DNA from: Octopus bimaculoides
Lineage: Eukaryota
DNA length: 64,000 bases
Reading direction: 5' to 3'
NCBI RefSeq assembly: GCF_001194135.2
Contig: NC_068995.1
Span: 50,092,852-50,156,851, forward strand
Below are positions 16,692 through 56,300 of the stretch, piece after piece. Every line of letters starts with the position of its first letter. Within the stretch, counting starts at the first letter, position 1. Both the position numbers and the translations under genes were made by a program. The notes beneath the pieces are model-generated. The model saw only the letters and a program-made list of their open reading frames with translations. It was not told where the DNA came from and did not search any database.

Positions 16692-16796
16692 TCACAAACC
16701 AGAAACTGACAAAGACCAGAGTCCAATTGTACTCAACCAGATAAATTCTTCCAATTTATTCTTGTGTTTCATCTGAATATGTTCCAGGAAGCCATC
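16692..16796 (-). CDS. Bcl-2-family protein, terminal coding exon (end of BH2 + hydrophobic tail anchor): DGFLEHIQMKHKNKLEEFIWLSTIGLWSLSVSGL*
   Basis: Strong acceptor ttttattttccttaatgcag|GAT. DGFLEH continues the BH2 motif (compare Mcl-1 RGW|DGFVEFF) in phase 0 with the donor after TGG at 23173. C-terminus is hydrophobic. Confidence 0.8.
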   Translation of the reverse strand, partial: DGFLEHIQMKHKNKLEEFIWLSTIGLWSLSVSGL

Positions 16797-16940
16797 CTGC
16801 ATTAAGGAAAATAAAAACATATGAGAAAATAGAATACAAAAAATAGAAAAATATGCAATTTTGGAGACTAGAGTACTCTTAAAAAAAGGTACATCCCTCT
16901 TTTCCTCACAACAGAAGCTTAAGGTTGAAATAGGTAGCAT

Positions 16941-17100
16941 AACCCTTTAACATTCAGATTACTCTGCCAAGTATATTTATCTATTCACTGTTTTGAATTA
17001 ATCATACATTACCTCATGGCTTTGAGAATTCAATGTGACTTTTTATAATGACATTGTAGGGTAGGTGTGAGAGGCTAGATCTGGCTGATATAAATATAAA
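16941..17100 (+). mobile_element. Fragment of a dispersed repeat starting taaccctttaacattcagat (possible TTAA-type MITE end)
   Basis: Related segments at 57951-57985, 58265-58370 and 58930-58975 (gaattaatcatgcatt..., ttgtagggtaggtgtgaga). Confidence 0.4.
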
Positions 17101-17367
17101 ATATTTTCAACTTTCTAAAAGTTTAGCTCCCCACCCCCTATCTTGTTCTAACTAACAAAAAAAAAAAAAAAAAAAAAANNNNNNNNNNAAAGTCCTTTTT
17201 TTCAGATCACTCATTTTATTGTGGCACATTATGGTATAGAGTTTCTCCCTGTTGTGTTGGTAGCCCTGACAAAGTTGTAATATCACGTTTATAACCGCTC
17301 CATTTTTACAATGTTATGCTTTTTGTATACTTATTTATCAATGCCTTAGAACAAAATTTCGACTGGG

Positions 17368-17682
17368 ATACACTGGGATGGAAAATTGCTCCCAGCACTC
17401 AGAGGCATTGAAAAGGTTGATAGACTGGCAACAATAGTAAATTTTCAAGGGAAGGAGCCATTGTTGGGAGTCTCTGAAATTCTAACATCTTTAGGAGAAC
17501 AGCAAGCCATGGCCGTTTACCAAGCAGTGAAGAAATGGGGTATAACCGACAAAATTCAGGCACTTTGCTCTGATACGAAAGTAAGCAACACAGGTCGAGT
17601 GAATGATGCCAGTACAAATCTAGAAAAGTTGTTCAATCGCAACCTGTTGTACTTCCCTTGCCATCATGCTGACACTGTATAG
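17368..17682 (+). pseudogene. DDE DNA-transposase remnant (hAT-related, HWDGK type)
   Basis: In-frame IHWDGKLLP...EKVDRL...LLGV...GEQQAMAVY...WGITDKIQALCSDT..SNTGR...LLYFPCHH: two catalytic Asp motifs and CxxH; truncated on both sides. Family assignment is from recall of the motif. Confidence 0.75.
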
Positions 17683-19727
17683 TCCTTATTCATTTTGGAC
17701 ATCACCTGGACAATGTATACTATAATACGTTATCATCACAAGCCTCCAATTCCAACCAAAATTTATGTACAAAAGATCTGGCAACATTTAGAAAGTTGCA
17801 AATTTCTAAATCATTGTGGCTTGTATGTAAAGTAACTATGACTGCATGTCTTTTCATTTCTTGATTTAGCATGATAAATTGGAAGGTTTATCCAAAAAAA
17901 GAAATAGAAAAAAGATACATTAAATAATTTGAAGGTGTAATGAACTAACAATAAAATGTACTCAAATACCCCTCGCACCCTGTAGAAGACATTTGACCAA
18001 TGAGCTGCACAGTGGTACCAAATCCCAAAACCAGATAGTAACAGAAGGAATTTAATAACAAAATTTCTGTATTGACAAGGAATAGAACAAAGTGGGCAAC
18101 AGCAGTATAGATCTATACACACGTGTCATCAGCAAGCAAAACTACAAAATAACTAAACATTTTGAAAATAATCTAATGAGAATTTTTTAAAACGAACTTG
18201 TTGCAAAAAATGTTTTAACAAAGTCCCAAAATAAGGTGTGATGAGGGGAATTTATACTAGGAAAAAAAAAAACAAAGATGAAGAGGTAACATTTGAAACA
18301 CTTTTTAAATAGAATGGTCACAGTTGAAACTTTCAGAAAAATGCATTTTTTGCACTTCTCTGTGCTCTCAAGTGTATGCACATATGAGTGCAAATCCTAG
18401 TCTGTGCAAAGGACACAGACTGGTTATTTTCAAGTCTGAAAATTTTCTGTTTCAGCTTTGTGTGACCAGTGATTTTCTGAATGAAAAAAAAAAAAGAGTT
18501 TAGGCTCCGGTTTCAGTCCCACTGTGTGGCGCTTTTGACAAAGTATGCTCTAGCGCTTGGCCAACCGAAACCCTTTGAGTGGGTCTGGCAGACGGAAACT
18601 GAAAGCTTGTCATGCGCGCGAGAGAGAGAAAGACCACTGGTACCACTTGATAACCGGTGTTAGTTTGTTTACGTTCCTCACAACTGAGTAGTTCGGCAAA
18701 AAAGAACCATAGAATAAGTACCAGGTTTAGAAAAGAAAATTTACTGGGATCGATTCCCTAACATAGCTGCAACCTAATGACTGCAACAAAGGTAAAACAT
18801 CGGGAACGAGACATTTTCAGAGCTGGCTTTAGGATTTATTATACACTACAGTGAAAAACGTTCCACATATGGCCATTTCGTATATTATCTTGAGCGCTAT
18901 GTCTTGTTCTCGATTATGTACAGTGTCTTTTCTTTGTTAGACAGTAAGGTTATTTGGCTGTTGAGTCTAGCAGGTCGGGCAACCACAGAAACGCCCGTGC
19001 TGGTTCGTTTTTGCGTAGTTTGGCCCAAGTAACAAATAAATATAAAAGTATGTCAGCCAACCTGAAGAGAGAAGCGATTTGCCTGCTGCGTAAGAAGATA
19101 AATTGATATGCCAGTGTGTGGGTAGATGAGAATGCAAACGTTTCGGACCAAACCTCTAAGTAATATGATGATACAAAAATTCGTAATTGTTAACAGACTA
19201 TTCATTTTGGCATGAATGAGGAGAGGTCGGAAAGTATGACGTTAACACATTCAAGAGAATACGTGACTGACATCTCACAAGAAGGAAATTCTGCTTTACA
19301 CATGACATATAAACCCATCATAACTTTATTATTATTATTATTTTATTTTTTGAATTTTCAGAAATTTCTCGAGAATTTGTGTTCTACACACGACTATGAA
19401 ATTTGTTTAAGTTTTCGAAATTTTATAAAATTTTAAAAAATTATTTAAAATAGAGTCTGAATTTTGGGGCTTAAATCCCCAGTAATTGACCCATTAAATG
19501 CTCAGAGTAACGATTATATTCTAGGTTCTGTTGGGTAACCCGACTCTTCCCGTTTCAAAAATAAAGTCAATTTGGCAAGATTTCAAAGCGAAATTTGTAG
19601 CAATTTAAAAAATGCTTGAAATATCAAGTGACAGCTGTAATTAGATCTACATCTATTCAAAGGAGGATGTAAAAATGCTCAGAGCAAAGAAAAGGAAACG
19701 AAAATTCACAAATATGAATTTCTACTC

Positions 19728-19821
<94 letters not shown>

Positions 19822-21787
19822 ATGGGCGACACAATACATATTGTCGGATTATGGATTAAATATTTATATATTTATCTAGAGAGTAGTATAGTTTTCGTTA
19901 AATATTGCCTCGTGTGTGTGTGTGTTTTAAAGCTGAAAAACAATGGAAGTTATGAGAAATAAGGTTTAGATGCCTTCTTTTGGAAATTTCCAGAGCAATC
20001 AACACCTCTTCTCCGTAAATTTCCAGAAGGGATCCTTACTCTGAAATACTGAAATGTCAAGTGACAGGACTAACCATCGACCTGTACTTATAAATAGAAC
20101 TTTACTTAATTTACTATCATCGAAAATTGTGCGATAAGTGCTTAAAACCGATACAAAGAAGAAAAAAAAATCAACGAACTATTTACACTTGGTTTTAAAT
20201 AAATAATTCGATAAATTAGGTCGGTCAAAATGTATTAAAAAAAACATAATAGCAGCAATTAAAATAATTTGGATTATAGAATAATTTTACTCTTTGCAAC
20301 CAATTCCCAGAGTAAAATTGGAGACTAAATCCGGTTTGGTAGTCTGCAAGTCTGGTTTTAATTTGATAATGAATCTGCCCATCCCACGAACTAATGAAAT
20401 AATGGGAGAACTTCTACGTGGCAGCAATGACCTGCTAGAAATAGCAGCAAAGCCTCACTCAGTACACCTCTTAGAAAGAGAATAAGCTTGGTAATATGAT
20501 CTTGGATAGATTAAGATAGATATTCACAGTTGGAGCGGCTTTGACCGTAAGTAAGTCTGCACGATCAATGCTCAAACCGGAGCTAAACTGCGACAACAAT
20601 GGCCTTGTTAAAAACTACCACACCATGATGTGCTTGGTTCGCTCCACGTCACATATAATCGATATTCTTTGTGTGACTTCAGCTGAACTGACTTTTATAC
20701 TAAACAAATCGATAATCAAAGTATTGAAAGTCAAAGAAAATGATGAGAGTGTGCGTGTGTGCTTAGCAACAATAAACAAAAAGAGAGAGACAGAGAGAGA
20801 ATTGATGAAATATATATCAAGGAAAATGATTTCGCCAAAACTTTTAAACTTTATACATAAAAGATGAGCGAACAGCTTATATTGTCGTTTGACTTGTTAA
20901 AAACCGAAGTCCCTCAAACCAGTGTAACGTAGTCCGAGATATAGTGGAAAAAATAAATCAAGATAAAAAGGAAGACTGAAACAGCTTTATTGTCGGATTA
21001 TGATTCTAAATTTCTATTAAATATACCGACATTTAAAACTGGTTTGGTCAGAAAAAAAAAAGCAGCTATATCTCCATGGAATCACATCGTATTCTCTTTA
21101 AAAAAAAAAAAAGACTATAATAGACACGTCGGATCATCTATATCTTATACAACAAATTAAAAATAATATCAATTTCAATATATGACGGGGTGGCTTTATC
21201 TGGAAAGTCTAACACCATAGGACTGATCTAATAGGATGACTTGAAACAAAGCCACCACCACCAGATATAAAAAGAGAAAAGGAGAAACTAATTACACAGT
21301 TTAATTTGTATTGTGAATTTTTTTCCCCCAGTTAATTCTTTAAAAGAATTTAGATTGCCGATATGAATATATTGTGAGACACAATCAAGCAAGGTCGACA
21401 GCTGAATACTGTCAGCAACAATAATTAACAGTCACATATATAAAGTAACTGGGTATTAAGAGATTTCACTGCTATTTCAAGCAGGTCGAACGACTACGTT
21501 GAGGCCTCCTTTTGGTGAAAGAACAAATAAAAGGGGGTTTGTGTGGAAAGGAATATATAGTTTATTGTTATTGGTAATTATTTTGTCGGAAATGCGAAAT
21601 CGAACTGAGTAGGGTTTTAACTCCATAACAAAGCGAGGCGCCATAAATGACATTAATCCCCTGACATACTTCAATACTATTTGTATAATAATTAATAAGT
21701 CTTAGGGTAGCAAAAAATTAAGAAATTTAATTTACTACTCGTGGTGTAGCGAGAAAAAAATTAGTCAACAGACTATATATTATTCAT

Positions 21788-22007
21788 GTAAAATACATTG
21801 TACATTTAATACACATTAGAGATGCCCATAAAAGGACATCTGACCCGCTAGAAAGAGCAGCCAAAGCTCTACACCACAAATTTTTTATTCCTTTTCGAAA
21901 TTATCCCTAATTTTTTTGTGGTGTAGAGCTTTGGCTGCTCTTTCTAGCGGGTCAGATGTCCTTTTATGGGTATCTCTAATGTGTATTAAATGTACACTGT
22001 ATTTTAC
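21788..22007. repeat. Near-perfect inverted repeat, 93-bp arms, 34-nt loop
   Basis: Arm 21788-21880 is the reverse complement of 21915-22007 with 2 differences. Confidence 0.95.
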
Positions 22008-22034
22008 TATTTGTATAATAGATAATAAACTATA

Positions 22035-22159
22035 CAGGGTGTCCACAAAGTCTGGGTACATGGGGATTAACAAACTTTAAGAAATTATTATTTCTTATAT
22101 TTAATTGTTTATGTCTTGATTTTATTTACTCCATGTCCCCAGACTTTGTAGACACCCTG
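22035..22159. mobile_element. Tc1/mariner-type MITE (125 bp)
   Basis: 29-bp TIRs CAGGGTGTC(C/T)ACAAAGTCTGGG(T/G)ACATGG; TA on both sides. Confidence 0.9.
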
Positions 22160-23172
22160 TATTTGTATAATAGATAATATACTGTATAATTTTAGATACA
22201 GCATACAGAAACAAAAGTTTGTGTGAGTGAGAGATTTTCATATGAGAATAAAGATCTACAATATTTTCGCACTTGTATGTAACACCGTCAATTAATATAA
22301 ATTAAATAATTAGAACTGTACCGGTCCGTTTCTTTTTTTGTGATTTGTAAGAAAAAGTGTTAAATAATAAATTATATAATGCTATTGTAAAAAGAATTTT
22401 ACAGACAGACTTGCTACTAATGTTAATTTCTTTCAACTATAATATTTATATAAAGATTAACAACACCAATTCCGTTTATACTTTCATGATATATCTGGAA
22501 AGTATTTTTTATTCAATAAATTAAATGTGTTTATTTTCTTTTAAAACATGGGAGCAGAATTCTGTTTAAAGCACACCATATGACCTCTAATAGCATATCT
22601 CACAATCACCCCCATTTATTTATCAGTCTGACGTATTCAGATTTTTTAAATATCTTTCTTCCCCATTAACACATTTAATGGTCTATTTCTGGGATTTAAG
22701 CTAAAATTTAAAGACTGTTCGTATTTCAAACTGTGATTTTTTTTTTAAATTCGAAAAAGTGACAAAAAAACAAAAAACAACTTTAGTCTCTTTAACAGGC
22801 AAAGAGACCGATAGAATAAGTACTAGGCTTCCAAAGAATAAGTCCTGGGGTCGATTTGCTCGACTAAAGGCGGTGCCCCAGCATGGCCGCAGTCAAATGA
22901 CTGAAACAAGTAAAAGAATAAAAAAAAGAGTCGTGTGATTTTCTGTGTGTAGAATACAAATTCGTAAACATATTCTGAGAAGTCTATAAGATAGTTATGA
23001 GAGCTTATATGGCATGCTTTTAGTAAAAAATGTTTTAAAAAAAGCCTATACAATTCTCAGAACGATGTCTTTTGTTTACTAAATCAGATCACTATATTTT
23101 ATTTCACGTACAAAAATATATATATATATGTGTGAATTTAAAAAATATTTATATATAATAAATGAACCTCAC

Positions 23173-23688
23173 CCATCCGCTGTTATCATTTATCCAGGTG
23201 TCGATCTTGTGTTCTTTAAAGAGTTTTATCAAGATCTGGTTATACTGTTCCCATGAAAGGTCATGATGTTTGGATCGTTGATCTTCGGCCAAAACAGCCA
23301 ACATCGTGAAAACCATAGAGATACGACGCCAATGTAAATTTTTACGATCCTCCAGGATGGTCTCCACTACGCAACGGTACGCCTTTTGGATTGTTAAGTC
23401 ATCTGCAACTTCGTCTAACAATTGGGCAACATTTTTATACAACGCATCTCTATAAATGTTGTAAATTTCTAATACTGATTTCCTCATGCCTGCACAAATG
23501 TCGGATTCGGGTTGCGAAATGAAATGACCTTTATCGAAGTTCAACACCATGTCTTTGACCATTCTAGGCACCTCTTTTCTACAAGATTTCAAATTTTCTT
23601 CCTTATCCATGCGAATCACGGATTGAAGGGGGTGCATAACAGGCGAGGAGTTAATACTACAAAAGATATTCGTCAGGACAGAGACCAT
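23173..23688 (-). CDS. Divergent multi-BH Bcl-2-family protein (Mcl-1/A1-like architecture), main coding exon, 172 aa; 206 aa after splicing to 16796
   Basis: BH1-like ILEDRKNLHWRRISMVFTML; BH2-like IDTWINDNSGW; BH3-position helix ICAGMRKSVLEI. First ATG at 23688. Donor TGG|GTGAGG directly after the BH2 Trp codon, the conserved intron position in Bcl-2-family genes. Confidence 0.85.
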
Positions 23689-23794
23689 CTTCAGGGATAT
23701 TAACTGAACGCCTGTTATTTCTTTTGGGGGGAAACGATAATAACTCACTCAATGTAAGCTAAAATGACTTCAAAGTGTAATGAAAGCGCTCTCC

Positions 23795-24110
23795 CTTTAT
23801 ATATAGCAATGTAACCCGCCTTTCTGATTGGCTGTTTTTGCTGTTCTCTTTACACTCACTCATACATAATATATACAGCCATATATATATTTATACATAT
23901 ACACACGCTCTCGCGCGCGCATATGAATGGAAACACGCATGCGCATTTATAAAATCCTTTTTGTAAACAAAGCAATTGATGTTTTTCTGCATTTAATGCA
24001 GAAAACCCCAAAATTATAAGTGAAAAAGAATTTTCTTTCTGTTTTTTTTTTTTTTGACAACCCCCGTCATTCTTTGTAAACGAGAGTAAGTTCCCGTGAC
24101 GGAAGTCTGG
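23795..24110. promoter_or_regulatory. CpG-rich, probably bidirectional promoter
   Basis: Minus-strand TATATAAAG (~23795-23803) and CCAAT box AGCCAATCAG (23824-23833) upstream of the Bcl-2-like ATG; NRF1-like CGCATGCGCA at 23936-23945; ETS CGGAAGT at 24100-24106; plus-strand donor TAA|GTATGT at 24290. Confidence 0.6.
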
Positions 24111-24310
24111 AATATGAGTTGGATTTTCTCCGTTTTGAAAGGGAATTTTCAAATGCCCCATGAGGGTGTTTGGTTGTTCTAATGCCCGCCACCGTTCACG
24201 GTTAACGCTGCAAGTGGTTTGGCTTACTTTAATAAGTTTCCGTTGACCCTTATGGTGCGCGACCAAATTAGGAATACTTATGTGATTAAGTATGTAGTAA
24301 CAATTGTATG

Positions 24311-25258
24311 NNNNNNNNNNNNNNNNNNNNNNNNNNNNNNNNNNNNNNNNNNNNNNNNNNNNNNNNNNNNNNNNNNNNNNNNNNNNNNNNNNNNNNNNNN
24401 NNNNNNNNNNNNNNNNNNNNNNNNNNNNNNNNNNNNNNNNNNNNNNNNNNNNNNNNNNNNNNNNNNNNNNNNNNNNNNNNNNNNNNNNNNNNNNNNNNNN
24501 NNNNNNNNNNNNNNNNNNNNNNNNNNNNNNNNNNNNNNNNNNNNNNNNNNNNNNNNNNNNNNNNNNNNNNNNNNNNNNNNNNNNNNNNNNNNNNNNNNNN
24601 NNNNNNNNNNNNNNNNNNNNNNNNNNNNNNNNNNNNNNNNNNNNNNNNNNNNNNNNNNNNNNNNNNNNNNNNNNNNNNNNNNNNNNNNNNNNNNNNNNNN
24701 NNNNNNNNNNNNNNNNNNNNNNNNNNNNNNNNNNNNNNNNNNNNNNNNNNNNNNNNNNNNNNNNNNNNNNNNNNNNNNNNNNNNNNNNNNNNNNNNNNNN
24801 NNNNNNNNNNNNNNNNNNNNNNNNNNNNNNNNNNNNNNNNNNNNNNNNNNNNNNNNNNNNNNNNNNNNNNNNNNNNNNNNNNNNNNNNNNNNNNNNNNNN
24901 NNNNNNNNNNNNNNNNNNNNNNNNNNNNNNNNNNNNNNNNNNNNNNNNNNNNNNNNNNNNNNNNNNNNNNNNNNNNNNNNNNNNNNNNNNNNNNNNNNNN
25001 NNNNNNNNNNNNNNNNNNNNNNNNNNNNNNNNNNNNNNNNNNNNNNNNNNNNNNNNNNNNNNNNNNNNNNNNNNNNNNNNNNNNNNNNNNNNNNNNNNNN
25101 NNNNNNNNNNNNNNNNNNNNNNNNNNNNNNNNNNNNNNNNNNNNNNNNNNNNNNNNNNNNNNNNNNNNNNNNNNNNNNNNNNNNNNNNNNNNNNNNNNNN
25201 NNNNNNNNNNNNNNNNNNNNNNNNNNNNNNNNNNNNNNNNNNNNNNNNNNNNNNNNNN
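24311..25258. other. Assembly gap (N run). Other gaps: 17179-17188, 32109-32154, 33145-33294, 41496-41850, 42531-42817, 48682-49629, 50537-50670, 52520-52691
   Basis: Runs of n in the sequence. Confidence 1.
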
Positions 25259-25369
25259 ATCATAAATTTTCAAACATTTTTTTTTTTTCATAAAAACCTT
25301 CCCCCCACCTATCATTTCTAAGGGTGTGCTGAAAAAAAAAAAAAATTGGAAAAATTTCCTTCACAACAG

Positions 25370-25490
25370 AGAAAATCGAACTTGTGTGGGCATTCTGATC
25401 CAAGATTCTGCCCTCTGCCTTTCTATCGGTCTCTTATTCCAAACTGCTCATTTAGAAGAACGCAAACAAACCAACACCAGTTGTCAAATG
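25370..25490 (+). other. Candidate internal (probably 5'UTR) exon
   Basis: Acceptor tttccttcacaacag| and donor ATG|GTGAGA; 121 nt; no recognisable protein similarity. Confidence 0.3.
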
Positions 25491-25578
25491 GTGAGAAGTA
25501 AACATGCACACACATACACACACATTTAGGTTTGATGATGTAAACAGAAATAGAACTTGAAACATGAGTGTGTGGGGG

Positions 25579-25609
<31 letters not shown>

Positions 25610-26432
25610 CTATTAATAGCTAGTACAAGTAACAGGGTGGCTCAAAGGTTGAGAGTTTTGTGTACTGATAAGTACTAGTGCAAGAAAAAAACAGCCTGGT
25701 AACTTCTGCTGATTATTAATATTATATATGTACAATGGACTTCCATACACTTCCTTTCTACAAAATTCATTCACAAGGTTGGCCAGCCTGGGTGTTGAAG
25801 AGATGATTGCCCAAAGTCTCAGTACTACTACCTGGTAAGATCGTGCTTTCTACTATGGCTCAGGCCAACAAAAGCCTTATGAATGGATTTGGTAGACAGA
25901 AACTGAAAGAAACCCTTGTAACTCTATGTTTGTTCCACATGACTGTTTGACAATTGGTGTTGGTATGATTATATCTTTGTAACTTAGCAGTTTGGCAAAA
26001 GAGACCAATAGAATAAGCACCAGGATTAAAATACTAATACATAGTGTGATTGATGTATTCAATTAGAATTCTTCAAGCTGTTGTCCCAGCATGGCTGTAG
26101 TCTAAATGACTGGAACAAGTAAAAGATACACACACACTCACACACACACAAACACACACACACATTCATACATACATTCATATGAAACGTTTCTAATTTT
26201 AGAAATCTATATGAAGAAATTGATCAGATAATGCAGAATGTGAAATTGTTTTATTACTGTGAAACTTTGACCAGTGAGTAATGTATCAAGTTGTACAATA
26301 TACAGAATGAATAATCAATATTGTTTTGTTATGAAGGAACCTTGATGCAGATAAGTTTATACGTAATCAAGCTTACATAACATTTGAATGTTATTTCTGA
26401 TTTTTTATTTAAAGGATTATTATGCATCTAAA

Positions 26433-26692
26433 GGAGGTGCAATGGCCCAGTGGTTAGGGCAGCAGACTCGCAGTCATAGGATCGTGGTTTCGATTCCCAG
26501 ACCGGGCGTTGTGAGTGTTTATTGAGCAAAAACACCTAAAGCTCCACGAGGCTTCGGCAGGGGACAGTGACGAACCCTGCTGTACTCTTTCACCACAACT
26601 CAGCCACTTGCACGTTAATTTCACGAGCAGGCTGTTCCGTTGATCGGATCAACTGGAACCCTCGACGTCGTAAGCAACGGAGTGCCAACAAC
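26433..26692 (+). mobile_element. tRNA-derived SINE, family C, with TSD
   Basis: A/B-box-like head (ggcccagtggttagggc...ggtttcgattccc); 11-bp TSD ATGCATCTAAA at 26422-26432 and 26693-26703; other copies at 37248-37590 (+) and 50130-50505 (-). Confidence 0.85.
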
Positions 26693-27697
26693 ATGCATCT
26701 AAAATTTTGAGGGGGTGGTTAAGAATCTTGCTTTGCAAGCCTGTGGTTTGGGATTCAGTCCCAGCACATGGCACCTTGAGTAAGCGTCTTCTACACCAGG
26801 CCAACCAATACTTTGTGAGTGAATTTGGCAGATGGAAACTGCATGGAAGCCCAATATATACGTGTGTGTGTGTGTGTATGTTGTAGTGGGCATGCAGAAG
26901 TAGTATCATGGGTAAACAAAACATTTAGATCCAGTGTCGTGCATGATCAGGTACACGATAAAGAAATCAATTCCTCCCAAAGTCATTTCATGGTTGTCTC
27001 TCTCACACAGTGCTGATGATAGCCAAGAATGTGGAAATGCAACATTCACAGCAAATTAGCAGTGAATACAGCCTTTATGCAGGCCAAATATGTCCCAAAT
27101 TTAAACTGATCTTCCATATGTTAACATGTACCTCCTTGCGGCAATGTAAACTTTCATTTAATCAAGATATCCTCAGCCTGAGGTATATACACCTTGCCTG
27201 GATATTTACCACTTCTGAGGTTCCCCTTGCTATGAAACATAGGTAGCCTGGATCTTATCTACTCCATTCTATAACTCTTGTAATCTTATTCACACATCCT
27301 ACAACCCTGGTCACCTACTGTGAAATATAAAAAGAACTTTTTCAGTTTATTGTACTTTGATACAAAAAAAAAAAAAAAATCACAACCTTCCAACAGAGTA
27401 TTTTCACATGGGAAGATCAATACTAAGAGTCAAATTTATAATAAAATTCATTTTGACTGGAACTATAAGCTTTGCCTAATGGCTTACTTGAATAGCCAGA
27501 AAGGTCGACTGATTTTAAAATCTTCAGACAGCCAGATCATAACAACTCCTTTACATGTGGTTGCATTGAAACCCTGTCGAACTCATGTTTGAAGGTTACA
27601 TATTCAGTGATTGTGGTGATTGGATCCAGTGGAATATGAATTTAGATTTATTTGAAGCTTGGAGTAACTTACTTTGTGATTCTACATTGTAATAATA

Positions 27698-27751
27698 TAG
27701 ATAGATAGATAGATAGATAGATGTGATTCTACATTGTAATAATATAGATAT

Positions 27752-27812
<61 letters not shown>

Positions 27813-27940
27813 CAGACAGGTAGGTTGATAAATAGACAGATAAGTAGAGAGAAAGAGAGAGACAAATACATAGATAAACTAATAAACAAATTGATAGACA
27901 TGTAGATAAATAGATAGACTGATAGATAGGTAGATTAAAA
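27698..27940. repeat. (GATA)n microsatellite with degenerate extensions
   Basis: Direct reading of tandem TAGA units; the segment tgtgattctacattgtaataatatagata is locally duplicated. Confidence 0.95.
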
Positions 27941-28118
27941 GTAAATCTGAGAATATCGCTTTAAAAAAAAAACCTTTCCAATTTTTCTTTGCCAAGCTGA
28001 CCTACTTGAAACTTGATTTTTTTCTCCACACAATTCACATTCAATCAAGAATACTAAATAGTTCACTGTAAAAATAGCCACAAAAGCTATCAGACAAAAA
28101 GACCAAAAAAATATTAAT

Positions 28119-28274
28119 ACGTCACGTCACGTCACACATGAATGAATGTTCGCATTCAACGTCAACCATTAAAATTGTGTGCGTGTGTATGTATTATACT
28201 TAAAGTCGTGTAGGTGTATTAAAATATACATATAATATATAGATACAACTGCTGACACACACACACATGTATGT

Positions 28275-28350
<76 letters not shown>

Positions 28351-28676
28351 CATACCTACGCATTCTTTATCACGTGAGGCTTCACGAGTTATCGTTCTTG
28401 ATATTTTCTTTTCAGTTTCATAAAATTTTTATTTTTTTCGCATCACGCTTCTTGTTAGTCTTCGATGTCTTCCAAGAAAGTAGTCTCGTGTAACATCTTG
28501 TCGTTCGGAAAGGTTTATACAACTTTCTCTTAACGGATACTATTCACACAAAACTGTAACAGCTCCTGTAAGTCGATTAACTTTTTGTTTTTTTATATAT
28601 AATTTCTTTTTTCAATATCCAATATCGGTTTTAATTTATTTCTAATTTTTTTTTTGACAAGACACCACCTGTCCAG
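28119..28676 (+). promoter_or_regulatory. CpG-rich candidate proximal promoter / first exon of the BH3-only gene
   Basis: (CGTCA)x3 at 28120-28134; E-box TCACGTGA at 28370-28377; donors CCT|GTAAGT (28568) and CAG|GTATGT (28677); locally higher CpG density. Confidence 0.45.
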
Positions 28677-31386
28677 GTATGTTTAATTATATATTTTCAA
28701 GTGTTTTAATTTTTATTGTTCCTTCTAAGTATTTCAGTATTTCAGTATCAACTTGTAGCTTTCAAGTATAACTATGTTTACTAAAAAGAAAATATTTGAT
28801 TTAATTTATTTTTGGGCGTGTATGGGTTTTAATCATTCTTTTTCGAAAATCTATTATTTTCGTGCCTACCGCAACTTGAAATTGTTATTTTTCTTACATT
28901 GACATATGTCTTCTTAAAAGGATTATCGAATTATCGACCTAAACGTAACGATTACTACTGGGAATAAAAACTTGTTTTGTCTCATAAGGTTGTCAATTTG
29001 TTTTGTATTGTCTTCGCGCACTTGACATTCCCGAACAATGTTGGGTTTTTCCGCGATAGATTCAGTTTCACATTTTTAATTATGATTTGTTTCACACACA
29101 CACATATATATATATATAGAGAGAGAGAGAGAGTTTTATTTTACTAAAGGCATTCCAGTGACGGCCACCTCGTTTACTTTGGATGTGGTGGTCTTTAAGA
29201 TTACTCTATCTAATGTGTACCAGTCTTTATTCTAATGTGATGGAGTTTGATTTAGGCGAAATTTGGTTGCAATTTTTAGCAGGTCGAGTAATTACATGGA
29301 TGCTGTTTCTCAATCCTGTTAACAAATTCTTGACCATGTTAACTAGTTCCTTTCCTAGTCACAAGCCGCGCGCTATTTTCATATCTCTCTATAGTAGTTA
29401 TTGGAATTGGTGAGACGTAATCCTCTAGATCGTGTTGCCGGCTTCGTAAGTCTACTCGAAGAAGTAACACGCTATATTCTCTTTTGATTTTTTTTTTCTC
29501 GTCTGACGATCCTTGTCTTGTTTTCTACTATAATTCATTCACATCTAGGATACTCTACCTTATAAGAATATTAAATCGATCCCCAGAACATAGTTGATTA
29601 GTATTTCATTTTAACGACACCGGAAAACAAAGCTTGGTTCAATGGTATTTGAACTCTTAAGGTAAAGAGTTTTAATTAAAAAAAAATTGCATTTTGTCCA
29701 ACCTTCTAATGAAAATCCAAAGCTTAGCTGATGCATTCCTTTGCAGATTTTTACCCGTTCAATAAACCCCTTGCTAGCTCACATTTTATGTATATGGTAC
29801 TGTAGTAAGTAGTAAATTCTCAGTTCACTGTTTCCCATTTACCCCACAAAGTTATTTTGGAAATGCATGAATGTCATAACATCATAGATATTATAAAATT
29901 GTTTTTCGTCAATGACACTTGTTTTGAAACTTCCTGAAATATAGTTCTTAAGAAACAGTGGTGAATGTATCAACAACCAGAGACAGCATTGTTCAGATCC
30001 AGAAAAAGACTACCTCCCTGATCAGTTTGTGTTGTACTACAAAGCCCTATGCAACCTGCATATAGGGACTACAGCTCTTATCCTTGGCTCAGGTGCATCA
30101 GTTTCATGCTCAAACATTTTACATTAAAATACACCTGAAAATGAGTCCCTCACTGGCACATGGCCAATGCCAGCAAGGACATACTCAGGAATCCCTACGA
30201 GTCTCCAGTCTGAATTCTAATCTAAATATGTTGGTACTCCAATGCATTGTTTTCTAAATACAGTTGAGACCACTCTGATAACAACTGCTGCCCCACTGAT
30301 GGAATGTATTGTTTGTGTCCCTCATACAAACAACCATAGCTGCTGACCTTCTGTGAACTAGGCAGCTGTATATGTGATGCCCCAGTTTCTCCTTTTCCTC
30401 CCAGTCTCTCATCATATTTGAGATCTTTAACTCACTAACACTTTACTCAGTCCTCTTTTCCTCTGAACTGTATTCCTCTTGAAATCCCACTTTTCCCTAG
30501 GTTCACAACTCTAGATATTCCGGTATGATTTGAGAGAGATTTGACTACAAATTCTAGCAAGCTGAGTGACCCAGAGGCTCCCATGTGCATTTTCTTTAGA
30601 GGTATCAACTTACAAATGTTCATACTGAGCAATAATCTCATTGGCACTGCATTTTAAAAATACTTAATTTGAAGTGTTCAATGCAGCTGAGCAGAACACA
30701 CTAAATGCATTGCAGTATTTAGCATTGTACTTCTATCTACATCAGGGATCAACAACTCATCATTGTAATGCTATACTTGGATGGTGAGGTGGGGGTTATG
30801 TTTGGCCATAGTCCACATATATATTACATCATCTTACATATAAAAATTTCCCCTTGTATCTCCCTTCCATTGTCATCACTGGTAATATGTACGTGCAACA
30901 AAGGACACTCTGAATAACCCTCAACAACCCACAAATGCATTGGATTTTAAACATGTTTAGAAAAGGTCTGTGTCCCATAGAGAAAATCACAAAGGTTACA
31001 TGTGGTGTCAACCTCTGTTCTACATGTGATATCAACCTCTGTTCTACATCATCAATTCAAAGCCTGCTAGAGTTGGCTTCATTTTTTGTCTGCAGGTTTC
31101 ATAGAGCAAGTAACAATGACACACTTGTGATATATTTAGTTGCAGTCTTTACATTTTTATAGTCTAAGTTCAAATCCCAGTGTTGACTTTGCCTTCTGGG
31201 ACAGTGGTACCAGTCTCAAGAACTCCCTTCCTCCAAATCTTGAACCCTAACATAATTAAGAATCAAGAATAGAGTGGGATTTGGTTCAAATAACAGCAGA
31301 TTTTTATCTTCTTCCACAAGTAAAATAACACAGTATTTCAAAATTAATATCCTATAATTTCTTATATGTGTTTATTTTATTTACAG

Positions 31387-31451
31387 AATTTGAAACACTT
31401 TCAAAACAAAGGAAGATTCTGTTCAGAAAATCTGGAAGAAAAGTTTATTTG
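31387..31451 (+). other. Non-coding (5'UTR) exon of the BH3-only gene
   Basis: Acceptor tgtttattttatttacag|, donor TTG|GTAAAT; 65 nt, purine-rich (GAAGA), no ATG. Confidence 0.55.
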
Positions 31452-32219
31452 GTAAATAAAAATGAATATATTAAAAATTTTTTTCTCTCTAGAATCTAAT
31501 TTTTGAGCTAAGGAGCTGTCTTTTTCTTTTGAAGTTTATAAAATTTTATTTTTAAGCTAAAGAGTTTAAATTTATTAACCTTGAAACCACTCTTGGTTTT
31601 ATGATACAAACTTCATGTTTTAAAGTGGCCTACATTAAAATTTTCTGTTAGAATGTCATGTTAACTTGTGTTTCTAATATTAAGCTTATGACTGTGGCCA
31701 TGCTAGGGTGCTACCTTGAAGAACTTTTTCTCTTTTTTTTTTTTTAGTTGAACAAATTGACACCAGATTTTTGTTTTAAGTTTGATACTTATTTTATTGG
31801 TGCCTTTTACCGAACCGCTAAGTCACACCAGTTGTTAAGTGGTGGTGGGGAAAAACACTGACACATACACACCATACATTCATGTATATATATGTACACG
31901 GCCTTCTTTTCAGTTTCTGTCTACCAAATCCACTCATAGGGCTTTGGTCAGCTTGAGGCTATTGTAGAAGACACTTGCCCAAGGTGCCACACTGGGATTG
32001 ACCCTGGAACCCTGTAATTGGGAAGCAGACTTCTCACACATCTTCAAACTCAAATATGATGTCTTCAATATAGCATTTTTGAAAGAAAAGCTCTTCTACC
32101 CCCCCCCCNNNNNNNNNNNNNNNNNNNNNNNNNNNNNNNNNNNNNNNNNNNNNNTCTCTCTCTCTCTCTCTACATATATATATATATATATATATGAACA
32201 CATATGCCTGTATAGATGA

Positions 32220-32530
32220 AAGCAACTTTATTTAGCTTGGCATATCTTCTCAAGTACAGCAAAACGCTACATCTGCTGGTTCCTTGTCATTTCCTCAATG
32301 AAGCCCGGCATTCAAACATCCTTTCTCACCACTTTGTCCCACATCTTCCTGGGTCTGCCCCCTCCACAGATTCCCTCTGCTATTAGAGCTCGGCACTACT
32401 TTATGCAGCTGTCCTCATCCATATGCATCACATGACCAAACCACTGCAGCCTTCTCTCTTACATACAACATCTGATACCTTTTACACCCAATTTTCCTCT
32501 TAAATCATTTACACTCTGTCATGCATGCAC
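32220..32530 (-). mobile_element. RTE-clade LINE 3' fragment
   Basis: Minus-strand translation gives LQWFGHVMHMDEDSCIK*...GGGRPRKMWDKVVRKD, the typical RTE ORF2 C-terminus. Confidence 0.75.
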
Positions 32531-32805
32531 GCTACATTGAGTTTTGGACCAGTATTTTATGTATGCATAGAGTTAGTCATATTGATATAGCTTCAGGAAT
32601 GCTTGTTAGTTAATTTTTAAAGTTATCAAATTTGATGAGGATTTCAAAAAAACTATTTATGTTAGAAATGAGTTTTGACAATGTATCATGCAAGAAATGT
32701 AAGCTTCACATTCTACAGTGTTATCCATTTCTTTATTTTTGTAGGATTGACTTCTGAACAAATACTGTGTTATAACTACATATATATAGTTATATATATA
32801 TCTAT

Positions 32806-33081
32806 ATGTCTGGAGAAAATTGTTACGCGTGTTCTTCCCAAATGGCTAATCCTGCTGAACTGAATATGGCTCTTGAGCCAGTTAATTCTGGAAGTAGTTC
32901 AGAATCTAGTCCAGATGTCAACATATATGACCACTGTGGACAGATTCTTCGTCTCTTGGGCGACAGTTTTTATTGGATGACCTGTGGCAGAAAACTTCAG
33001 TTGATTGCCGACAAATTTTATTGTGTACAGATATTACTTCGCTTAACATTGCAAGATGCCATGCCCTATTCACCCATTTAA
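32806..33081 (+). CDS. Candidate BH3-only protein with two tandem BH3 motifs (BMF/Noxa-like), 91 aa
   Basis: CGQILRLLGDSFY (aa 44-56) and CGRKLQLIADKFY (aa 60-72) both fit L-x-x-x-[G/A]-D-x-F. Ser-rich N-terminus, hydrophobic tail. Acceptor tttctttatttttgtag| at 32744; first ATG of the exon is 32806, with an upstream in-frame TGA. Confidence 0.7.
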   Translation: MSGENCYACSSQMANPAELNMALEPVNSGSSSESSPDVNIYDHCGQILRLLGDSFYWMTCGRKLQLIADKFYCVQILLRLTLQDAMPYSPI

Positions 33082-33609
33082 GTATGGCTGTGAAATTTTT
33101 TTTAAGACTTGGCTGTTAGGGCATTTGGTTTTTTGGGGGGGCGGNNNNNNNNNNNNNNNNNNNNNNNNNNNNNNNNNNNNNNNNNNNNNNNNNNNNNNNN
33201 NNNNNNNNNNNNNNNNNNNNNNNNNNNNNNNNNNNNNNNNNNNNNNNNNNNNNNNNNNNNNNNNNNNNNNNNNNNNNNNNNNNNNNNNNNNNNNGGTGGG
33301 GGGGGGGGTCAATTAAAAAAAAAAATTCTTTTTGATATTTTTTTATCATTACAGTGTGAGAGAAAGAATCTTTCTCTGAGATGGTCTCCTGTTTTTAATA
33401 CCTAAGTATTTATGTATACTTAAAATTAATTTAAGAAAAAATTTCTGATATCCCTTCATTGGGGATCAGTGCTTTTTCTTTTTTTTTTTTTGGTTTTGTT
33501 TTTTTTTTTTTTGGATGAAAATATTTTTAATAGTGATATTCACTATTTAAAGTATGTAAATATGTGTAGCTCATCACCTATTTAATCACACTTTAATATT
33601 TTTACCGCT

Positions 33610-55875: not shown

Positions 55876-56226
55876 GAAGAAGAAGGCGAAGAAGAAGAAG
55901 AAGAAGAAGAAGAAGAAGAAGAAGAAGAAGAAGAAGAAGAAGAAGGCGAAGAAGAAGAAGAAGGCGAAGAAGGCGAAGAAGGAGTAGAAGGCGAAGAAGG
56001 AGAAGAAGAAGAAGGGGAAGAAGAAGAAAAAGAACAACAACAAGAACAAGGAGGAAAAGGAGAAGAAGAACAACAAGAACAAGAAGAGGGGGAAGAAGAA
56101 GAAGAAGAAGAAGAAGAAAAAGAAGAAGAAGAAGAAGAAGAAGAAAAAGAAGAAGAAGAAGAAGAAGAACAAGAAGAGGGGGAAGAAGAAGAAGAAGAAG
56201 AAGAAGAAGAAGAAGAAGAAGAAGAA
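55876..56226. repeat. Interrupted (GAA)n tract, ~350 bp
   Basis: Direct reading; interruptions GGC, GGA, CAA, GGG, AAA. Confidence 0.95.
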
Positions 56227-56300
56227 AGAGGTGAGTAGGTTGGAGGAGGAGAATAGAAATGACTATCAAACAGTGTCTGTACGGATGAGCGATGACATAC

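What the first reader, a model, noticed from the sequence alone, without database searches (positions are those of the whole stretch)
23173..33081. Head-to-head Bcl-2-like and BH3-only genes: a possible co-regulated death/survival module
Seen: the Bcl-2-like gene (minus) and the double-BH3 gene (plus) diverge with no other coding gene recognised between them. The 23.8-24.3 kb CpG-rich region has minus-strand TATA and CCAAT boxes plus NRF1- and ETS-like sites and a plus-strand donor (24290). A chain of candidate non-coding exons (25370-25490, 31387-31451) leads to the BH3 coding exon at 32745. Established: BH3-only proteins act by binding multi-BH Bcl-2 proteins, and NRF1/ETS sites are common in bidirectional promoters. 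Inference: a ligand-receptor pair transcribed from one promoter, with an atypical groove and an atypical two-motif ligand, resembling a linked toxin/antidote pair. A 948-nt gap lies in the first presumed intron, so linkage of the 5' exons is unproven.
Basis: inference. Interest (0 to 1): 0.75.

Follow-up and report, generated by a model that had tools for sequence, protein, structure and literature searches.

The report
Octopus Bcl-2-like gene beside double-BH3 gene
In Octopus bimaculoides a divergent Bcl-2-family gene lies back-to-back, about 9 kb away, with a small cephalopod-conserved gene whose protein carries two adjacent BH3-like death motifs, but the evidence favours a separate promoter for each gene over one shared switch.

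Summary
The window is Octopus bimaculoides. Both genes are real.

**Bcl-2-like gene (minus strand).** It passes Pfam's Bcl-2 threshold. It has two exons, the family's typical intron after the BH2 tryptophan, and an RNA contig that confirms the splice. Its CCAAT+TATA core promoter is conserved in other Octopus species.

**Double-BH3 ORF (91 aa, plus strand).** It is a true coding gene:
- An O. vulgaris orthologue exists.
- Three more distant cephalopod homologues (36-43% identity) keep both motifs.
- The double-motif core is under strong purifying selection (dN/dS 0-0.04).
- Spliced mRNA contigs exist in at least two other species.
- The two motifs are the best two BH3-profile matches in the whole six-frame window.

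**Spacing.** No annotated gene lies between the two in O. sinensis or O. vulgaris. The three assembly gaps in or next to the span are collinear with those genomes and touch no coding sequence.

**Shared promoter: not supported.**
- A second CpG-retaining island (27.8-29.8 kb) with conserved motifs and splice donors lies 3-5 kb upstream of the BH3 coding exon.
- In other cephalopods the gene's 5' exon sits in just such an island.
- The proposed exon at 25370-25490 lies in sequence absent from O. sinensis and O. vulgaris.
- No octopus BH3 transcript could be retrieved, so a far-upstream start is not excluded.

Binding between the two proteins, and any toxin/antidote behaviour, remain untested.

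The parts
23173..23688 (-). Bcl-2-like gene, coding exon 1 (172 codons, MVSVL...NDNSGW). It holds the degenerate BH3 region, BH1 (HWRR in place of NWGR) and BH2 (WINDNSGW). The donor GTGAGG lies directly after the Trp codon.
   Evidence: Pfam PF00452 35.9 bits vs cut-off 31.4. PDB sequence matches to BCL2L10, Bcl-xL and Bcl-2. RNA contig L001 is 100% identical over 23690..23172. Identical to XP_014772509.1.
16797..23172 (-). Bcl-2-like intron (about 6.4 kb), at the position typical of the family, after the BH2 GGW tryptophan.
   Evidence: Split alignment of L001. Acceptor ...aatgcag|GATGGC.
14903..16796 (-). Bcl-2-like exon 2. The CDS is 16796..16692 (DGFLEH...IWLSTIGLWSLSVSGL*, a hydrophobic tail). 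The 3' UTR runs at least to 14903.
   Evidence: L001 518-2412 aligns to 16797..14903 at 99.9%. Translation.
23797..23834 (-). Core promoter of the Bcl-2-like gene: TATA box (23797-23806) and CCAAT box (CAGCCAATCAG, 23824-23834).
   Evidence: Read. Conserved in O. sinensis and in a third Octopus contig, L020.
23930..24310 (.). Conserved upstream block with an NRF1-like site (CGCATGCGC, 23936-23944), an ETS-like site (GACGGAAGT, 24098-24106) and a plus-strand GT at 24290. It is either upstream regulatory DNA of the Bcl-2-like gene or the start of a divergent transcript.
   Evidence: Alignment with O. sinensis. CpG o/e about 1.0-1.2.
24311..25258 (.). Assembly gap (948 N). The flanks are collinear with O. 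sinensis, where the interval is 1109 nt of non-coding-looking sequence.
25318..25842 (.). Segment without a collinear counterpart in O. sinensis or O. vulgaris.
27800..29800 (+). Second CpG-retaining island (o/e 0.8-1.5), the most likely promoter and first-exon region of the double-BH3 gene. It includes ACGTCA repeats (28119-28136), an E-box TCACGTGA (28370-28377) and a conserved block at 28360-28567 that ends at a conserved donor GTAAGT (28568).
   Evidence: CpG profile. Three-species alignment. By analogy, the 5' exon of the homologous gene lies in such an island in other cephalopods.
31387..31451 (+). Candidate internal non-coding exon. Its AG and GT are conserved in O. vulgaris, but the exon is not distinguishable from its flanks. 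Unverified.
32109..32154 (.). Assembly gap in the intron upstream of the BH3 coding exon. The O. vulgaris counterpart of 32103-32213 is about 390 nt and includes a SINE-like element.
32745..33081 (+). Coding exon of the double-BH3 gene. The acceptor is tttttgtag|GATTG at 32744/32745. An in-frame stop lies at 32773. The CDS is 32806-33081 (91 aa, stop included).
   Evidence: Orthologue CAI9733864.1 in O. vulgaris. Homologues P0008, P0011 and P0012. dN/dS.
32935..32973 (+). BH3-like motif 1, residues 44-56, CGQILRLLGDSFY.
   Evidence: PSSM score 15.1 bits, second best of 56,283 six-frame 13-mers in the window. C, G, Q, L, L, D, F and Y are invariant in four cephalopod sequences.
32983..33021 (+). 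BH3-like motif 2, residues 60-72, CGRKLQLIADKFY. It matches the human BMF BH3 (recalled from memory) at 8 of 13 positions.
   Evidence: PSSM score 20.1 bits, the best 13-mer in the window. G, R, L, A, D, F and Y are invariant.
33145..33294 (.). Assembly gap 64 nt after the stop codon, in the presumed 3' UTR. It is about 32 nt of G/T runs in O. vulgaris.

Best explanation
These are two neighbouring, divergently oriented but separately promoted genes of the mitochondrial cell-death machinery.

(1) A divergent Bcl-2-family member.
- So far it is seen only in Octopus.
- It has two exons, BH1, BH2 and a tail anchor. The BH1 glycine is replaced (HWRR).
- It is driven by a conserved CCAAT+TATA promoter at about 23.8 kb.

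(2) A 91-aa protein conserved across cephalopods.
- It has a variable, probably disordered N-terminal half.
- Its strongly constrained C-terminal core holds two back-to-back BH3-consensus motifs, 16 residues apart.
- The protein is encoded on one exon that is preceded by a short non-coding exon or exons.
- It is most likely transcribed from its own promoter in the CpG-retaining island at 27.8-29.8 kb.

Inferred mechanism: the small protein is a BH3-only-type ligand. Its amphipathic helices insert into the hydrophobic groove of multi-BH Bcl-2 proteins to promote cell death. Two motifs would give either dual specificity or bivalent binding, as in mouse Noxa.

Shown: gene structures, coding status, conservation, the motif match and the neighbourhood.
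Inferred: promoter position, BH3 function and the identity of the binding partner. The neighbour is only one candidate partner.
For: GENE 1
- Pfam Bcl-2 above threshold and PDB sequence matches to Bcl-2 proteins.
- The spliced RNA contig L001 defines both exons.
- The intron lies after the BH2 Trp codon.
- CCAAT and TATA are conserved in O. sinensis and a third Octopus.
- dN/dS is 0.17 against O. sinensis.

GENE 2
- The O. vulgaris orthologue is 95% identical. All 5 amino-acid changes fall in the first 26 residues. In codons 36-91 there are 6 synonymous and 0 non-synonymous changes (binomial P = 8e-5).
- An exhaustive HMMER search and a profile search found three further cephalopod homologues that keep both motifs.
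- In these homologues dN/dS is 0.02-0.04 from the first motif onward and 0.27-0.51 before it.
- Fifteen mRNA-like contigs of about 1 kb exist in one species. One spliced contig (L011), set against the unspliced L005, shows a canonical GT..AG intron that ends 22 nt before the ATG.
- A PSSM built from 16 known BH3s gives 20.1 and 15.1 bits. This is within the leave-one-out range of genuine BH3s. The two motifs are the top two of 56,283 six-frame 13-mers in the window.
- AF2 gives no structure for residues 1-37 and two helices over the motifs, at low confidence.

SEPARATE PROMOTER
- CpG o/e is 0.8-1.5 at 27.8-29.8 kb, flanked by values of 0.25 or below.
- That island holds a conserved E-box, ACGTCA repeats and GTAAGT donors.
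- The same layout is seen in L005 and L004: a CpG-retaining island holding the 5' exon, followed by a CpG-depleted gene body.
- This matches the octopus methylation pattern of unmethylated TSS and methylated gene body reported in PMC9476566.
- The candidate linking exon 25370-25490 is not conserved.
Against: - No O. bimaculoides, O. vulgaris or O. sinensis transcript of the BH3 gene could be retrieved, so its TSS is inferred, not observed.
- The stretch 25.3-27.8 kb between the two islands is CpG-depleted in O. bimaculoides and O. sinensis. In octopus, methylation is reported on gene bodies and not on transposons. This could mean that a transcript runs through it, possibly from the conserved NRF1/ETS block at 23.9-24.3 kb.
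- O. vulgaris has two annotated isoforms (91 and 79 aa), which implies alternative 5' structures.
- BH3 motifs are short and degenerate. There is no Pfam or PDB sequence match.
- Many residues that do not define a BH3 (G45, Q46, Y56, W57, M58, T59, R62, Y72) are also invariant. This hints at constraints beyond a simple BH3.
- The structure models are low-confidence (pLDDT 51 and 41).
- No complex could be modelled.
Confidence: 0.55

Rival explanations
1. One bidirectional promoter at about 23.8-24.3 kb drives both genes. BH3 transcripts would start near 24.1-24.29 kb and splice through non-coding exons to 32745, so ligand and receptor are co-regulated.
For: - Conserved NRF1-like and ETS-like sites and a conserved plus-strand GT donor lie 150-520 bp upstream of the Bcl-2-like TATA.
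- The CpG-retaining domain continues about 740 nt into the gap equivalent in O. sinensis.
- The region 25.3-27.8 kb is CpG-depleted as a methylated gene body would be.
- Two 5' isoforms are annotated in O. vulgaris.
Against: - The Bcl-2-like core promoter is a TATA+CCAAT type, which is unusual for bidirectional promoters (established knowledge).
- Candidate exon 25370-25490 is absent from O. sinensis and O. vulgaris.
- An independent CpG-retaining island with conserved motifs and donors lies closer to the coding exon.
- In other cephalopods the 5' exon lies in such an island, and exon 1 is only about 60-70 nt in one species.
- No transcript evidence is available.
Confidence: 0.18
2. The small protein is not a functional BH3-only protein. 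It is a cephalopod-specific small helical protein with another role, for example a structured two-helix module with an N-terminal CxxC. Its resemblance to BH3 and its position next to a Bcl-2 gene would then be coincidental.
For: - The BH3 pattern is degenerate.
- There is no Pfam hit at E up to 10 and no PDB sequence match.
- Invariance extends to many positions that do not define a BH3, and to an N-terminal M-x-x-E-x-C-x-x-C-S-x-Q motif.
- The decapodiform-type homologues score only 9.9-13 bits on the BH3 PSSM.
Against: - Both motifs satisfy every defining position (h1, small, h2, h3, small, Asp, h4), and these positions are conserved in all homologues.
- The scores fall within the leave-one-out range of genuine BH3s and far above anything else in the window.
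- The size, the variable N-terminal half and the single coding exon are typical of BH3-only genes (PMC8998228).
- Lying next to one of the few Bcl-2-family genes in the genome is unlikely by chance (inference).
Confidence: 0.3
3. The two neighbours form a dedicated, co-evolved ligand-receptor or toxin-antidote-like pair. The atypical HWRR groove of the neighbouring Bcl-2-like protein would be the specific partner of the double-BH3 protein, and linkage would be maintained by selection.
For: - The head-to-head arrangement is kept in O. bimaculoides and O. sinensis, and in O. vulgaris as far as the loci reach.
- The atypical BH1 is invariant in Octopus.
- Nothing is annotated between the two genes.
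Against: - The BH3 gene is cephalopod-wide, but the Bcl-2-like protein found only Octopus relatives.
- There is no Bcl-2-like sequence within 10 kb upstream of the homologue in L004, though that flank is short.
- The BH3 core is under strong purifying selection and the Bcl-2-like gene has dN/dS 0.17. Neither shows arms-race evolution.
- No interaction data exist.
Confidence: 0.12

Closest known systems
Mouse Noxa (Pmaip1), the only described BH3-only protein with two BH3 motifs (PMC4905168, PMC2871139)
   Same: It is a small protein (103 aa against 91 aa) with no recognisable domain other than two related BH3 motifs that arose by internal duplication. Cys occupies the h1 position in human Noxa, as recalled from memory.
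   Different: - In mouse Noxa the motifs lie in separate duplicated halves of the protein, roughly 50 residues apart as I recall, and the duplication is rodent-specific.
- Here the motifs are contiguous (16-residue period) on one exon and are conserved across distant cephalopods.
- No sequence homology is detectable: no Pfam hit at E up to 10.
Vertebrate BMF, BIM and BAD BH3-only proteins, and the 'potential' lophotrochozoan BH3-only candidates of Banjara et al. 2022 (PMC8998228)
   Same: - Motif 2 (CGRKLQLIADKFY) matches the human BMF BH3 (IARKLQCIADQFH, from memory) at 8 of 13 positions.
- It is a small protein with its BH3 on a single exon and a variable remainder, as described for BH3-only candidates.
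- That paper lists an O. bimaculoides candidate in its Figure 5. I could not read the figure, so it may or may not be this protein.
   Different: It has two motifs rather than one. It lacks the dynein-light-chain motif and any similarity outside the BH3. There is no experimental evidence.
EGL-1/CED-9 (C. elegans) and the schistosome BH3-only/Bcl-2 system
   Same: These are invertebrate BH3-only ligands that act on a multi-BH Bcl-2 protein. They are lineage-restricted sequences recognisable only by the motif (PMC8998228).
   Different: Those pairs are functionally proven and, to my knowledge, are not neighbouring genes. They carry a single BH3.
Bidirectional-promoter gene pairs (TSSs less than 1 kb apart, CpG-rich, NRF1/ETS/NFY sites)
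   Same: The orientation is divergent. NRF1-like, ETS-like and CCAAT motifs are conserved upstream of the Bcl-2-like gene.
   Different: The core promoter contains a TATA box. The start codons are 9-12 kb apart. A separate candidate promoter island exists for the second gene. A TSS spacing under 1 kb has not been shown.
Eukaryotic toxin-antidote elements (peel-1/zeel-1, sup-35/pha-1, wtf)
   Same: A potential killer and a potential protector are tightly linked.
   Different: Those elements are young, fast-evolving and often polymorphic for presence or absence. The gene here is ancient within cephalopods and under strong purifying selection. Killing and rescue are untested.

Membership tests
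Bcl-2 family, multi-BH (Pfam PF00452) | Significant match to the Bcl-2 domain profile | tested here: met
   35.9 bits against a gathering cut-off of 31.4, E = 1.2e-8. Best PDB sequence matches are BCL2L10, Bcl-xL and Bcl-2.
Bcl-2 family, multi-BH (Pfam PF00452) | BH1 signature NWGR (Gly and Arg lining the groove) | tested here: not met
   The sequence is HWRR. Trp and the last Arg are kept, but Asn becomes His and Gly becomes Arg. This is invariant in three Octopus sequences. The groove is therefore atypical. Family membership rests on the other features.
Bcl-2 family, multi-BH (Pfam PF00452) | BH2 motif W-x-x-x-G-G-W, with the conserved intron directly after the Trp codon | tested here: met
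   WINDNSGW is followed by donor GTGAGG. The splice is confirmed by RNA contig L001.
Bcl-2 family, multi-BH (Pfam PF00452) | C-terminal hydrophobic tail anchor | tested here: met
   Exon 2 encodes ...EEFIWLSTIGLWSLSVSGL*. Judged by sequence inspection only.
Bcl-2 family, multi-BH (Pfam PF00452) | Eight- to nine-helix Bcl-2 fold | tested here: inconclusive
   The AF2 model is all-helical with 9 helices, but mean pLDDT is 40.6 from a 3-sequence alignment.
BH3-only proteins | BH3 consensus h1-small-x-x-h2(Leu)-x-x-h3-small-Asp-x-h4 | tested here: met
   Both motifs fit at every defining position. PSSM scores are 20.1 and 15.1 bits, the top two in the window. The defining positions are conserved in all four homologues. 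The PSSM was built from sequences recalled from memory.
BH3-only proteins | No other BH motifs and no Bcl-2 fold | tested here: met
   No Pfam family at E up to 10. The protein is 91 aa.
BH3-only proteins | Largely disordered, with the BH3 as a helix-forming segment on a single exon | tested here: inconclusive
   The single coding exon is shown. AF2 gives residues 1-37 without structure and helices at 40-59 and 64-85, but pLDDT is only 51. No disorder predictor was available.
BH3-only proteins | Binds the groove of multi-BH Bcl-2 proteins and promotes apoptosis in a BH3-dependent way | not testable with these tools
This needs binding and cell-death assays.
BH3-only proteins | Homology to a named BH3-only family (Bim, Bmf, Bad, Noxa, Puma, Bid, Hrk, Bik) | tested here: not met
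   No Pfam hit at E up to 10. No PDB sequence hit. An exhaustive HMMER search found only cephalopod relatives plus two spurious bacterial repeat proteins.
Bidirectional-promoter gene pair | Divergent orientation with no gene between | tested here: met
Bidirectional-promoter gene pair | Transcription start sites less than about 1 kb apart | not testable with these tools
   No octopus BH3 transcript is on record. Indirect evidence points to a TSS about 4.5-6 kb away.
Bidirectional-promoter gene pair | TATA-less, CpG-island-type shared promoter | tested here: not met
   A conserved TATA box lies about 20 nt downstream of CCAAT on the Bcl-2-like side. The CpG-normal state is a domain of about 6 kb, not a local island.
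Toxin-antidote element | Tight linkage of killer and protector | tested here: met
   About 9.1 kb between start codons here and about 12 kb in O. sinensis/vulgaris.
Toxin-antidote element | Rapid evolution or lineage restriction of the pair | tested here: not met
   The BH3 core has dN/dS 0-0.04 and is cephalopod-wide. The Bcl-2-like gene has dN/dS 0.17.
Toxin-antidote element | The linked antidote specifically rescues killing by the toxin | not testable with these tools
   Requires experiments.

The most novel reading that the evidence does not exclude
Cephalopods possess a previously undescribed class of BH3-only protein with two contiguous, individually conserved BH3 helices, a 'double warhead'. 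In Octopus it has become physically linked to a lineage-specific Bcl-2 paralogue whose altered BH1 groove (HWRR) is its dedicated partner. The two would share regulatory DNA, possibly including a far-upstream alternative promoter next to the Bcl-2-like TSS. That would make a genomically hard-wired death/survival module.
Probability: 0.12. Interest if true: 0.75.

Novelty: new variant of a known kind. Interest (0 to 1): 0.45.

Why it matters
**Why the small gene matters.** BH3-only proteins are the upstream triggers of mitochondrial apoptosis. They are almost impossible to trace by homology outside vertebrates, nematodes, cnidarians and flatworms. For molluscs they are listed only as 'potentially present' (PMC8998228).

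This small gene is a concrete candidate for cephalopods:
- It is demonstrably under purifying selection.
- Its constrained core is two back-to-back BH3 motifs.
- It is conserved across distant cephalopods and is expressed.

**What the tandem architecture offers.** Only mouse Noxa is described with two BH3s (PMC4905168), and there the motifs are not contiguous. The architecture here allows a direct test of whether two motifs give dual specificity or avidity.

**What the neighbour offers.** Its position next to a divergent Bcl-2 paralogue suggests an obvious first binding partner to test.

**What stays conjecture.** The more exciting claim, a single-promoter hard-wired death/survival module, is not supported by the present evidence.

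Tried and rejected
1. Exact look-up of the 91-aa product in public assemblies returned nothing on record. No octopus BH3 transcript or TSS could therefore be obtained.
3. Separate AF2 models have pLDDT 51 and 41, too low for fold searches, so none was run.
4. A PDB sequence search with the BH3 half gave only a chance hit at E = 1.1.
5. Pfam on the 91-aa protein gave nothing at E up to 10.
6. A search for a Bcl-2-like exon near the homologous gene in another cephalopod (L004, 10 kb either side) gave only E = 0.07-0.09 chance-level hits on the wrong strand. The flank is too short to decide on synteny.
7. The 5' non-coding exons of the other cephalopods show no detectable DNA similarity to the window. 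Only the BH3 coding core aligns.
8. Searching papers for the run accessions, to identify the other species, gave nothing.
9. Rfam and tRNA scans of the whole window gave no matches, so no known RNA gene lies between the two genes.
10. Pfam on the longer ORFs elsewhere in the window, including the 136-aa ORF inside the promoter region, gave nothing significant.
11. Two bacterial repeat proteins that matched the 91-aa query (P0009, P0010) were rejected as repeat-inflated artefacts.
12. I considered that the BH3 gene arose from the neighbour's own BH3 region. I rejected this: the homologous alpha-2 segment is ICAGMRKSVLEIY, with no G-D and no resemblance.

Full report
**Source and gaps**

The Bcl-2-like product is identical to XP_014772509.1, 'apoptosis regulator Bcl-2', of Octopus bimaculoides. 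The window is therefore from that genome.

I fetched orthologous loci from O. sinensis (L002, around the Bcl-2-like gene) and O. vulgaris (L003, around the BH3 ORF). Both are collinear with the window.

| Gap | O. sinensis / O. vulgaris counterpart | Location |
|---|---|---|
| 24311-25258 (948 N) | 1109 nt in O. sinensis, flanks in the same order and orientation | between the genes |
| 32109-32154 | about 390 nt in O. vulgaris, with a SINE-like element | intron |
| 33145-33294 | about 32 nt of G/T runs in O. vulgaris | 3' UTR, 64 nt after the stop |

No gap touches coding sequence, so continuity of the reading frame is not at stake.

**The Bcl-2-like gene (minus strand)**

- The ORF passes Pfam's Bcl-2 gathering threshold (35.9 against 31.4 bits). 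Its best PDB sequence matches are BCL2L10, Bcl-xL and Bcl-2.
- A Logan RNA contig (L001) aligns 100% to 23690..23172 and 99.9% to 16797..14903.
- This gives exon 1 (CDS 23688-23173), a 6.4-kb intron, and exon 2 (CDS 16796-16692 plus at least 1.8 kb of 3' UTR).
- The intron directly follows the BH2 tryptophan codon (…NDNSGW|DGF…). From established knowledge, this is the hallmark intron position of the family.
- BH2 and a hydrophobic tail are present.
- BH1 reads HWRR instead of NWGR, which removes the conserved glycine. This is invariant in three Octopus sequences.
- Relatives were found only in Octopus.
- dN/dS against O. sinensis is 0.17.
- The core promoter is a CCAAT box (23824-23834) followed by a TATA box (23797-23806). 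It is conserved in O. sinensis and in a third Octopus species.
- Further upstream, 23.93-24.31 kb is a conserved block.

**The double-BH3 gene (plus strand)**

ORF 32806-33081 encodes 91 aa. It is preceded by an in-frame stop and a strong acceptor at 32744/32745.

*Conservation within Octopus.* O. vulgaris annotates a 91-aa orthologue and a 79-aa isoform.
- All five amino-acid differences lie in the first 26 residues.
- In codons 36-91 there are six synonymous and no non-synonymous changes (P = 8e-5).

*Conservation across cephalopods.* An exhaustive HMMER search of 1.84 billion representatives and a profile search found three more relatives, P0008, P0011 and P0012. They are 36-43% identical, and all keep both motifs and an N-terminal M-x-x-E-x-C-x-x-C-S-x-Q.
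- Among these relatives, dN/dS from the first motif onward is 0.02-0.04, even though synonymous sites are near saturation.
- The N-terminal part has dN/dS of 0.27-0.51.

*Expression.*
- P0008 sits on 15 mRNA-like contigs of about 1 kb. Their 5' ends pile up within a few bases next to sequencing adapters.
- An unspliced contig exposes the acceptor, giving a non-coding first exon of about 60-70 nt.
- For P0012, the spliced contig L011, set against the unspliced L005, shows a canonical GT..AG intron of 2638 nt that ends 22 nt before the ATG.

*Conclusion.* The gene is real, is expressed in other cephalopods, and has at least two exons, with the whole protein on the last one.

**Are the motifs BH3s?**

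- Both 13-mers (CGQILRLLGDSFY, CGRKLQLIADKFY) fit every defining position of the BH3 consensus. Those positions are conserved in all homologues.
- I built a PSSM from 16 known BH3s recalled from memory. It scores the two motifs at 15.1 and 20.1 bits.
- That is within the leave-one-out range of genuine BH3s (2-28 bits, median about 17).
- The two motifs are the best two of 56,283 stop-free six-frame 13-mers in the window. The next best scores 10.1.
- The more distant homologues score 9.9-13 bits.
- No Pfam or PDB sequence match exists, as is usual for BH3-only proteins.
- AF2 predicts an unstructured N-terminal 37 residues and two helices over the motifs, at low confidence.

The literature states that mouse Noxa is the only known BH3-only protein with two BH3 regions (PMC4905168). 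It also states that BH3-only proteins are only 'potentially present' in lophotrochozoans (PMC8998228). That paper's Figure 5 lists an O. bimaculoides candidate that I could not read.

Function as a BH3 ligand is therefore a well-founded inference, not a demonstration.

**One promoter or two?**

CpG observed/expected is sharply bimodal across the window:

| Region | CpG o/e |
|---|---|
| 18.0-24.3 kb (Bcl-2-like 5' intron, exon 1, promoter) | about 0.6-1.1 |
| 25.3-27.8 kb | 0.55 or below, mostly 0.25 or below |
| 27.8-29.8 kb | 0.8-1.5 |
| 29.8 kb to the end of the window (includes the BH3 exon) | mostly 0.1-0.45, with local rises to about 0.8 |

In O. bimaculoides, methylation marks gene bodies. 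It spares promoters and transposons (PMC9476566).

The 27.8-29.8 kb island contains ACGTCA repeats, a perfect TCACGTGA E-box and a block at 28360-28567 that ends at a GTAAGT donor. All are conserved in O. vulgaris and O. sinensis.

In the two other cephalopods with genomic sequence, the homologous gene's 5' exon lies in just such an island. The island is 2.6 kb (L005) or about 7.5 kb (L004, with a retroelement in the intron) upstream of the coding exon. A CpG-depleted body follows it.

The two candidate linking exons fare as follows:
- 25370-25490 lies in 525 nt that have no collinear counterpart in O. sinensis or O. vulgaris.
- 31387-31451 keeps its splice sites but is not better conserved than its flanks.

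Together with the TATA-type Bcl-2-like promoter, this favours two promoters about 4.5-6 kb apart.

The case is not closed:
- No octopus BH3 transcript could be retrieved.
- The CpG-depleted 25.3-27.8 kb stretch between the islands is unexplained.
- The conserved NRF1/ETS block could fire a divergent transcript.
- O. vulgaris has two 5' isoforms.

**Linkage and the toxin/antidote idea**

- The head-to-head arrangement holds in O. bimaculoides and O. sinensis. Joining L002 and L003 (97% identical in their overlap) gives about 12 kb between start codons in the O. sinensis/vulgaris lineage.
- No gene is called between the two in either annotation.
- Beyond Octopus, synteny could not be tested. The 10-kb flank in L004 shows no Bcl-2-like exon.
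- The BH3 core is ancient and under strong purifying selection, and the neighbour shows ordinary constraint. Neither behaves like a selfish toxin-antidote element.
- Whether the neighbour is the partner is unknown.

**Verdict**

The central interpretive claim, one promoter and a hard-wired module, is not supported and is more likely wrong than right.

The most valuable product of the follow-up is the recognition of a cephalopod-wide, expressed, strongly constrained tandem-BH3 small protein.

Noticed in passing
window 1-64000: CpG observed/expected is sharply bimodal in multi-kilobase domains. It is about 0.7-1.3 at 1-12.5 kb, 0.1-0.35 at 12.5-18 kb, 0.6-1.1 at 18-24.3 kb, 0.55 or below at 25.3-27.8 kb, 0.8-1.5 at 27.8-29.8 kb, and mostly 0.1-0.45 from 29.8 kb to the end, with local rises to about 0.8. 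This looks like a footprint of germline gene-body methylation. The 34-kb depleted domain downstream of the BH3 gene has no gene assigned here.
   Followed up: partly
window 25259-27800; L002 8650-5850: The CpG-depleted stretch between the two CpG-retaining islands is also depleted in O. sinensis. Octopus methylation is reported to avoid transposons and intergenic DNA, so this hints at an unannotated transcript on either strand. It remains unexplained.
   Followed up: partly
window 23173-23688 vs 32806-33081: Synonymous divergence differs about two- to three-fold between the neighbours. dS is 0.37 for the Bcl-2-like gene against O. sinensis and 0.135 for the BH3 ORF against O. vulgaris. Non-coding identity differs likewise: 78-86% around the Bcl-2-like gene and 88-94% in the CpG-depleted BH3 region. 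Local mutation rate appears to track CpG content.
   Followed up: partly
window 23392-23430 (Bcl-2-like residues 87-99): The Bcl-2-like protein has a second segment, VAQLLDEVADDLT, that fits the BH3 pattern (h1-small-xx-L-xx-h3-A-D-x-h4). By alignment it falls in the alpha-3 region, not the canonical alpha-2 BH3. The homologous alpha-2 segment (ICAGMRKSVLEIY) has lost the G-D.
   Followed up: no
window 22855-22905; L003 9060-9400: A SINE-like element (…GCCGCGGCCATGCTGGGGCACC…) occurs just downstream of Bcl-2-like exon 1 in the window, within the intron. In O. vulgaris it also occurs at the place of the 32109-32154 gap. The gap may hide, or O. bimaculoides may lack, this insertion.
   Followed up: partly
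window 27600-27935 and 28255-28350: Long (GATA)n, (CA)n and (TA)n microsatellites flank the candidate BH3 promoter. The (CA)n(TA)n tract is 60 nt longer than in O. vulgaris and O. sinensis.
   Followed up: no
window 52239-52793 (+), interrupted by gap 52520-52691: An ORF (…YGSEAWSITPETRRKELW…) looks to me like the C-terminal part of a non-LTR retrotransposon ORF2. Pfam gave no significant hit.
   Followed up: partly
window 55740-56609: A long (AGC/GCT)n-type trinucleotide repeat produces Ser-, Leu- and Arg-rich pseudo-ORFs in several frames. It is not a gene.
   Followed up: no
L013-L017 5' ends; L012 3' end: Public Logan contigs carrying the homologue P0008 retain Illumina adapter sequence at their ends. 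P0008's first 10 residues come from a TTG start called with the bacterial code, so the real start is probably the conserved MSGETC. P0001 reads past the real TGA stop (…SGL-W-KIKLLE).
   Followed up: yes
L004 5975-6820: A reverse-transcriptase (RVT_1) ORF sits in the intron between the 5' exon island and the BH3 coding exon of another cephalopod. This explains its longer intron, about 7.5 kb against 2.6 kb.
   Followed up: no
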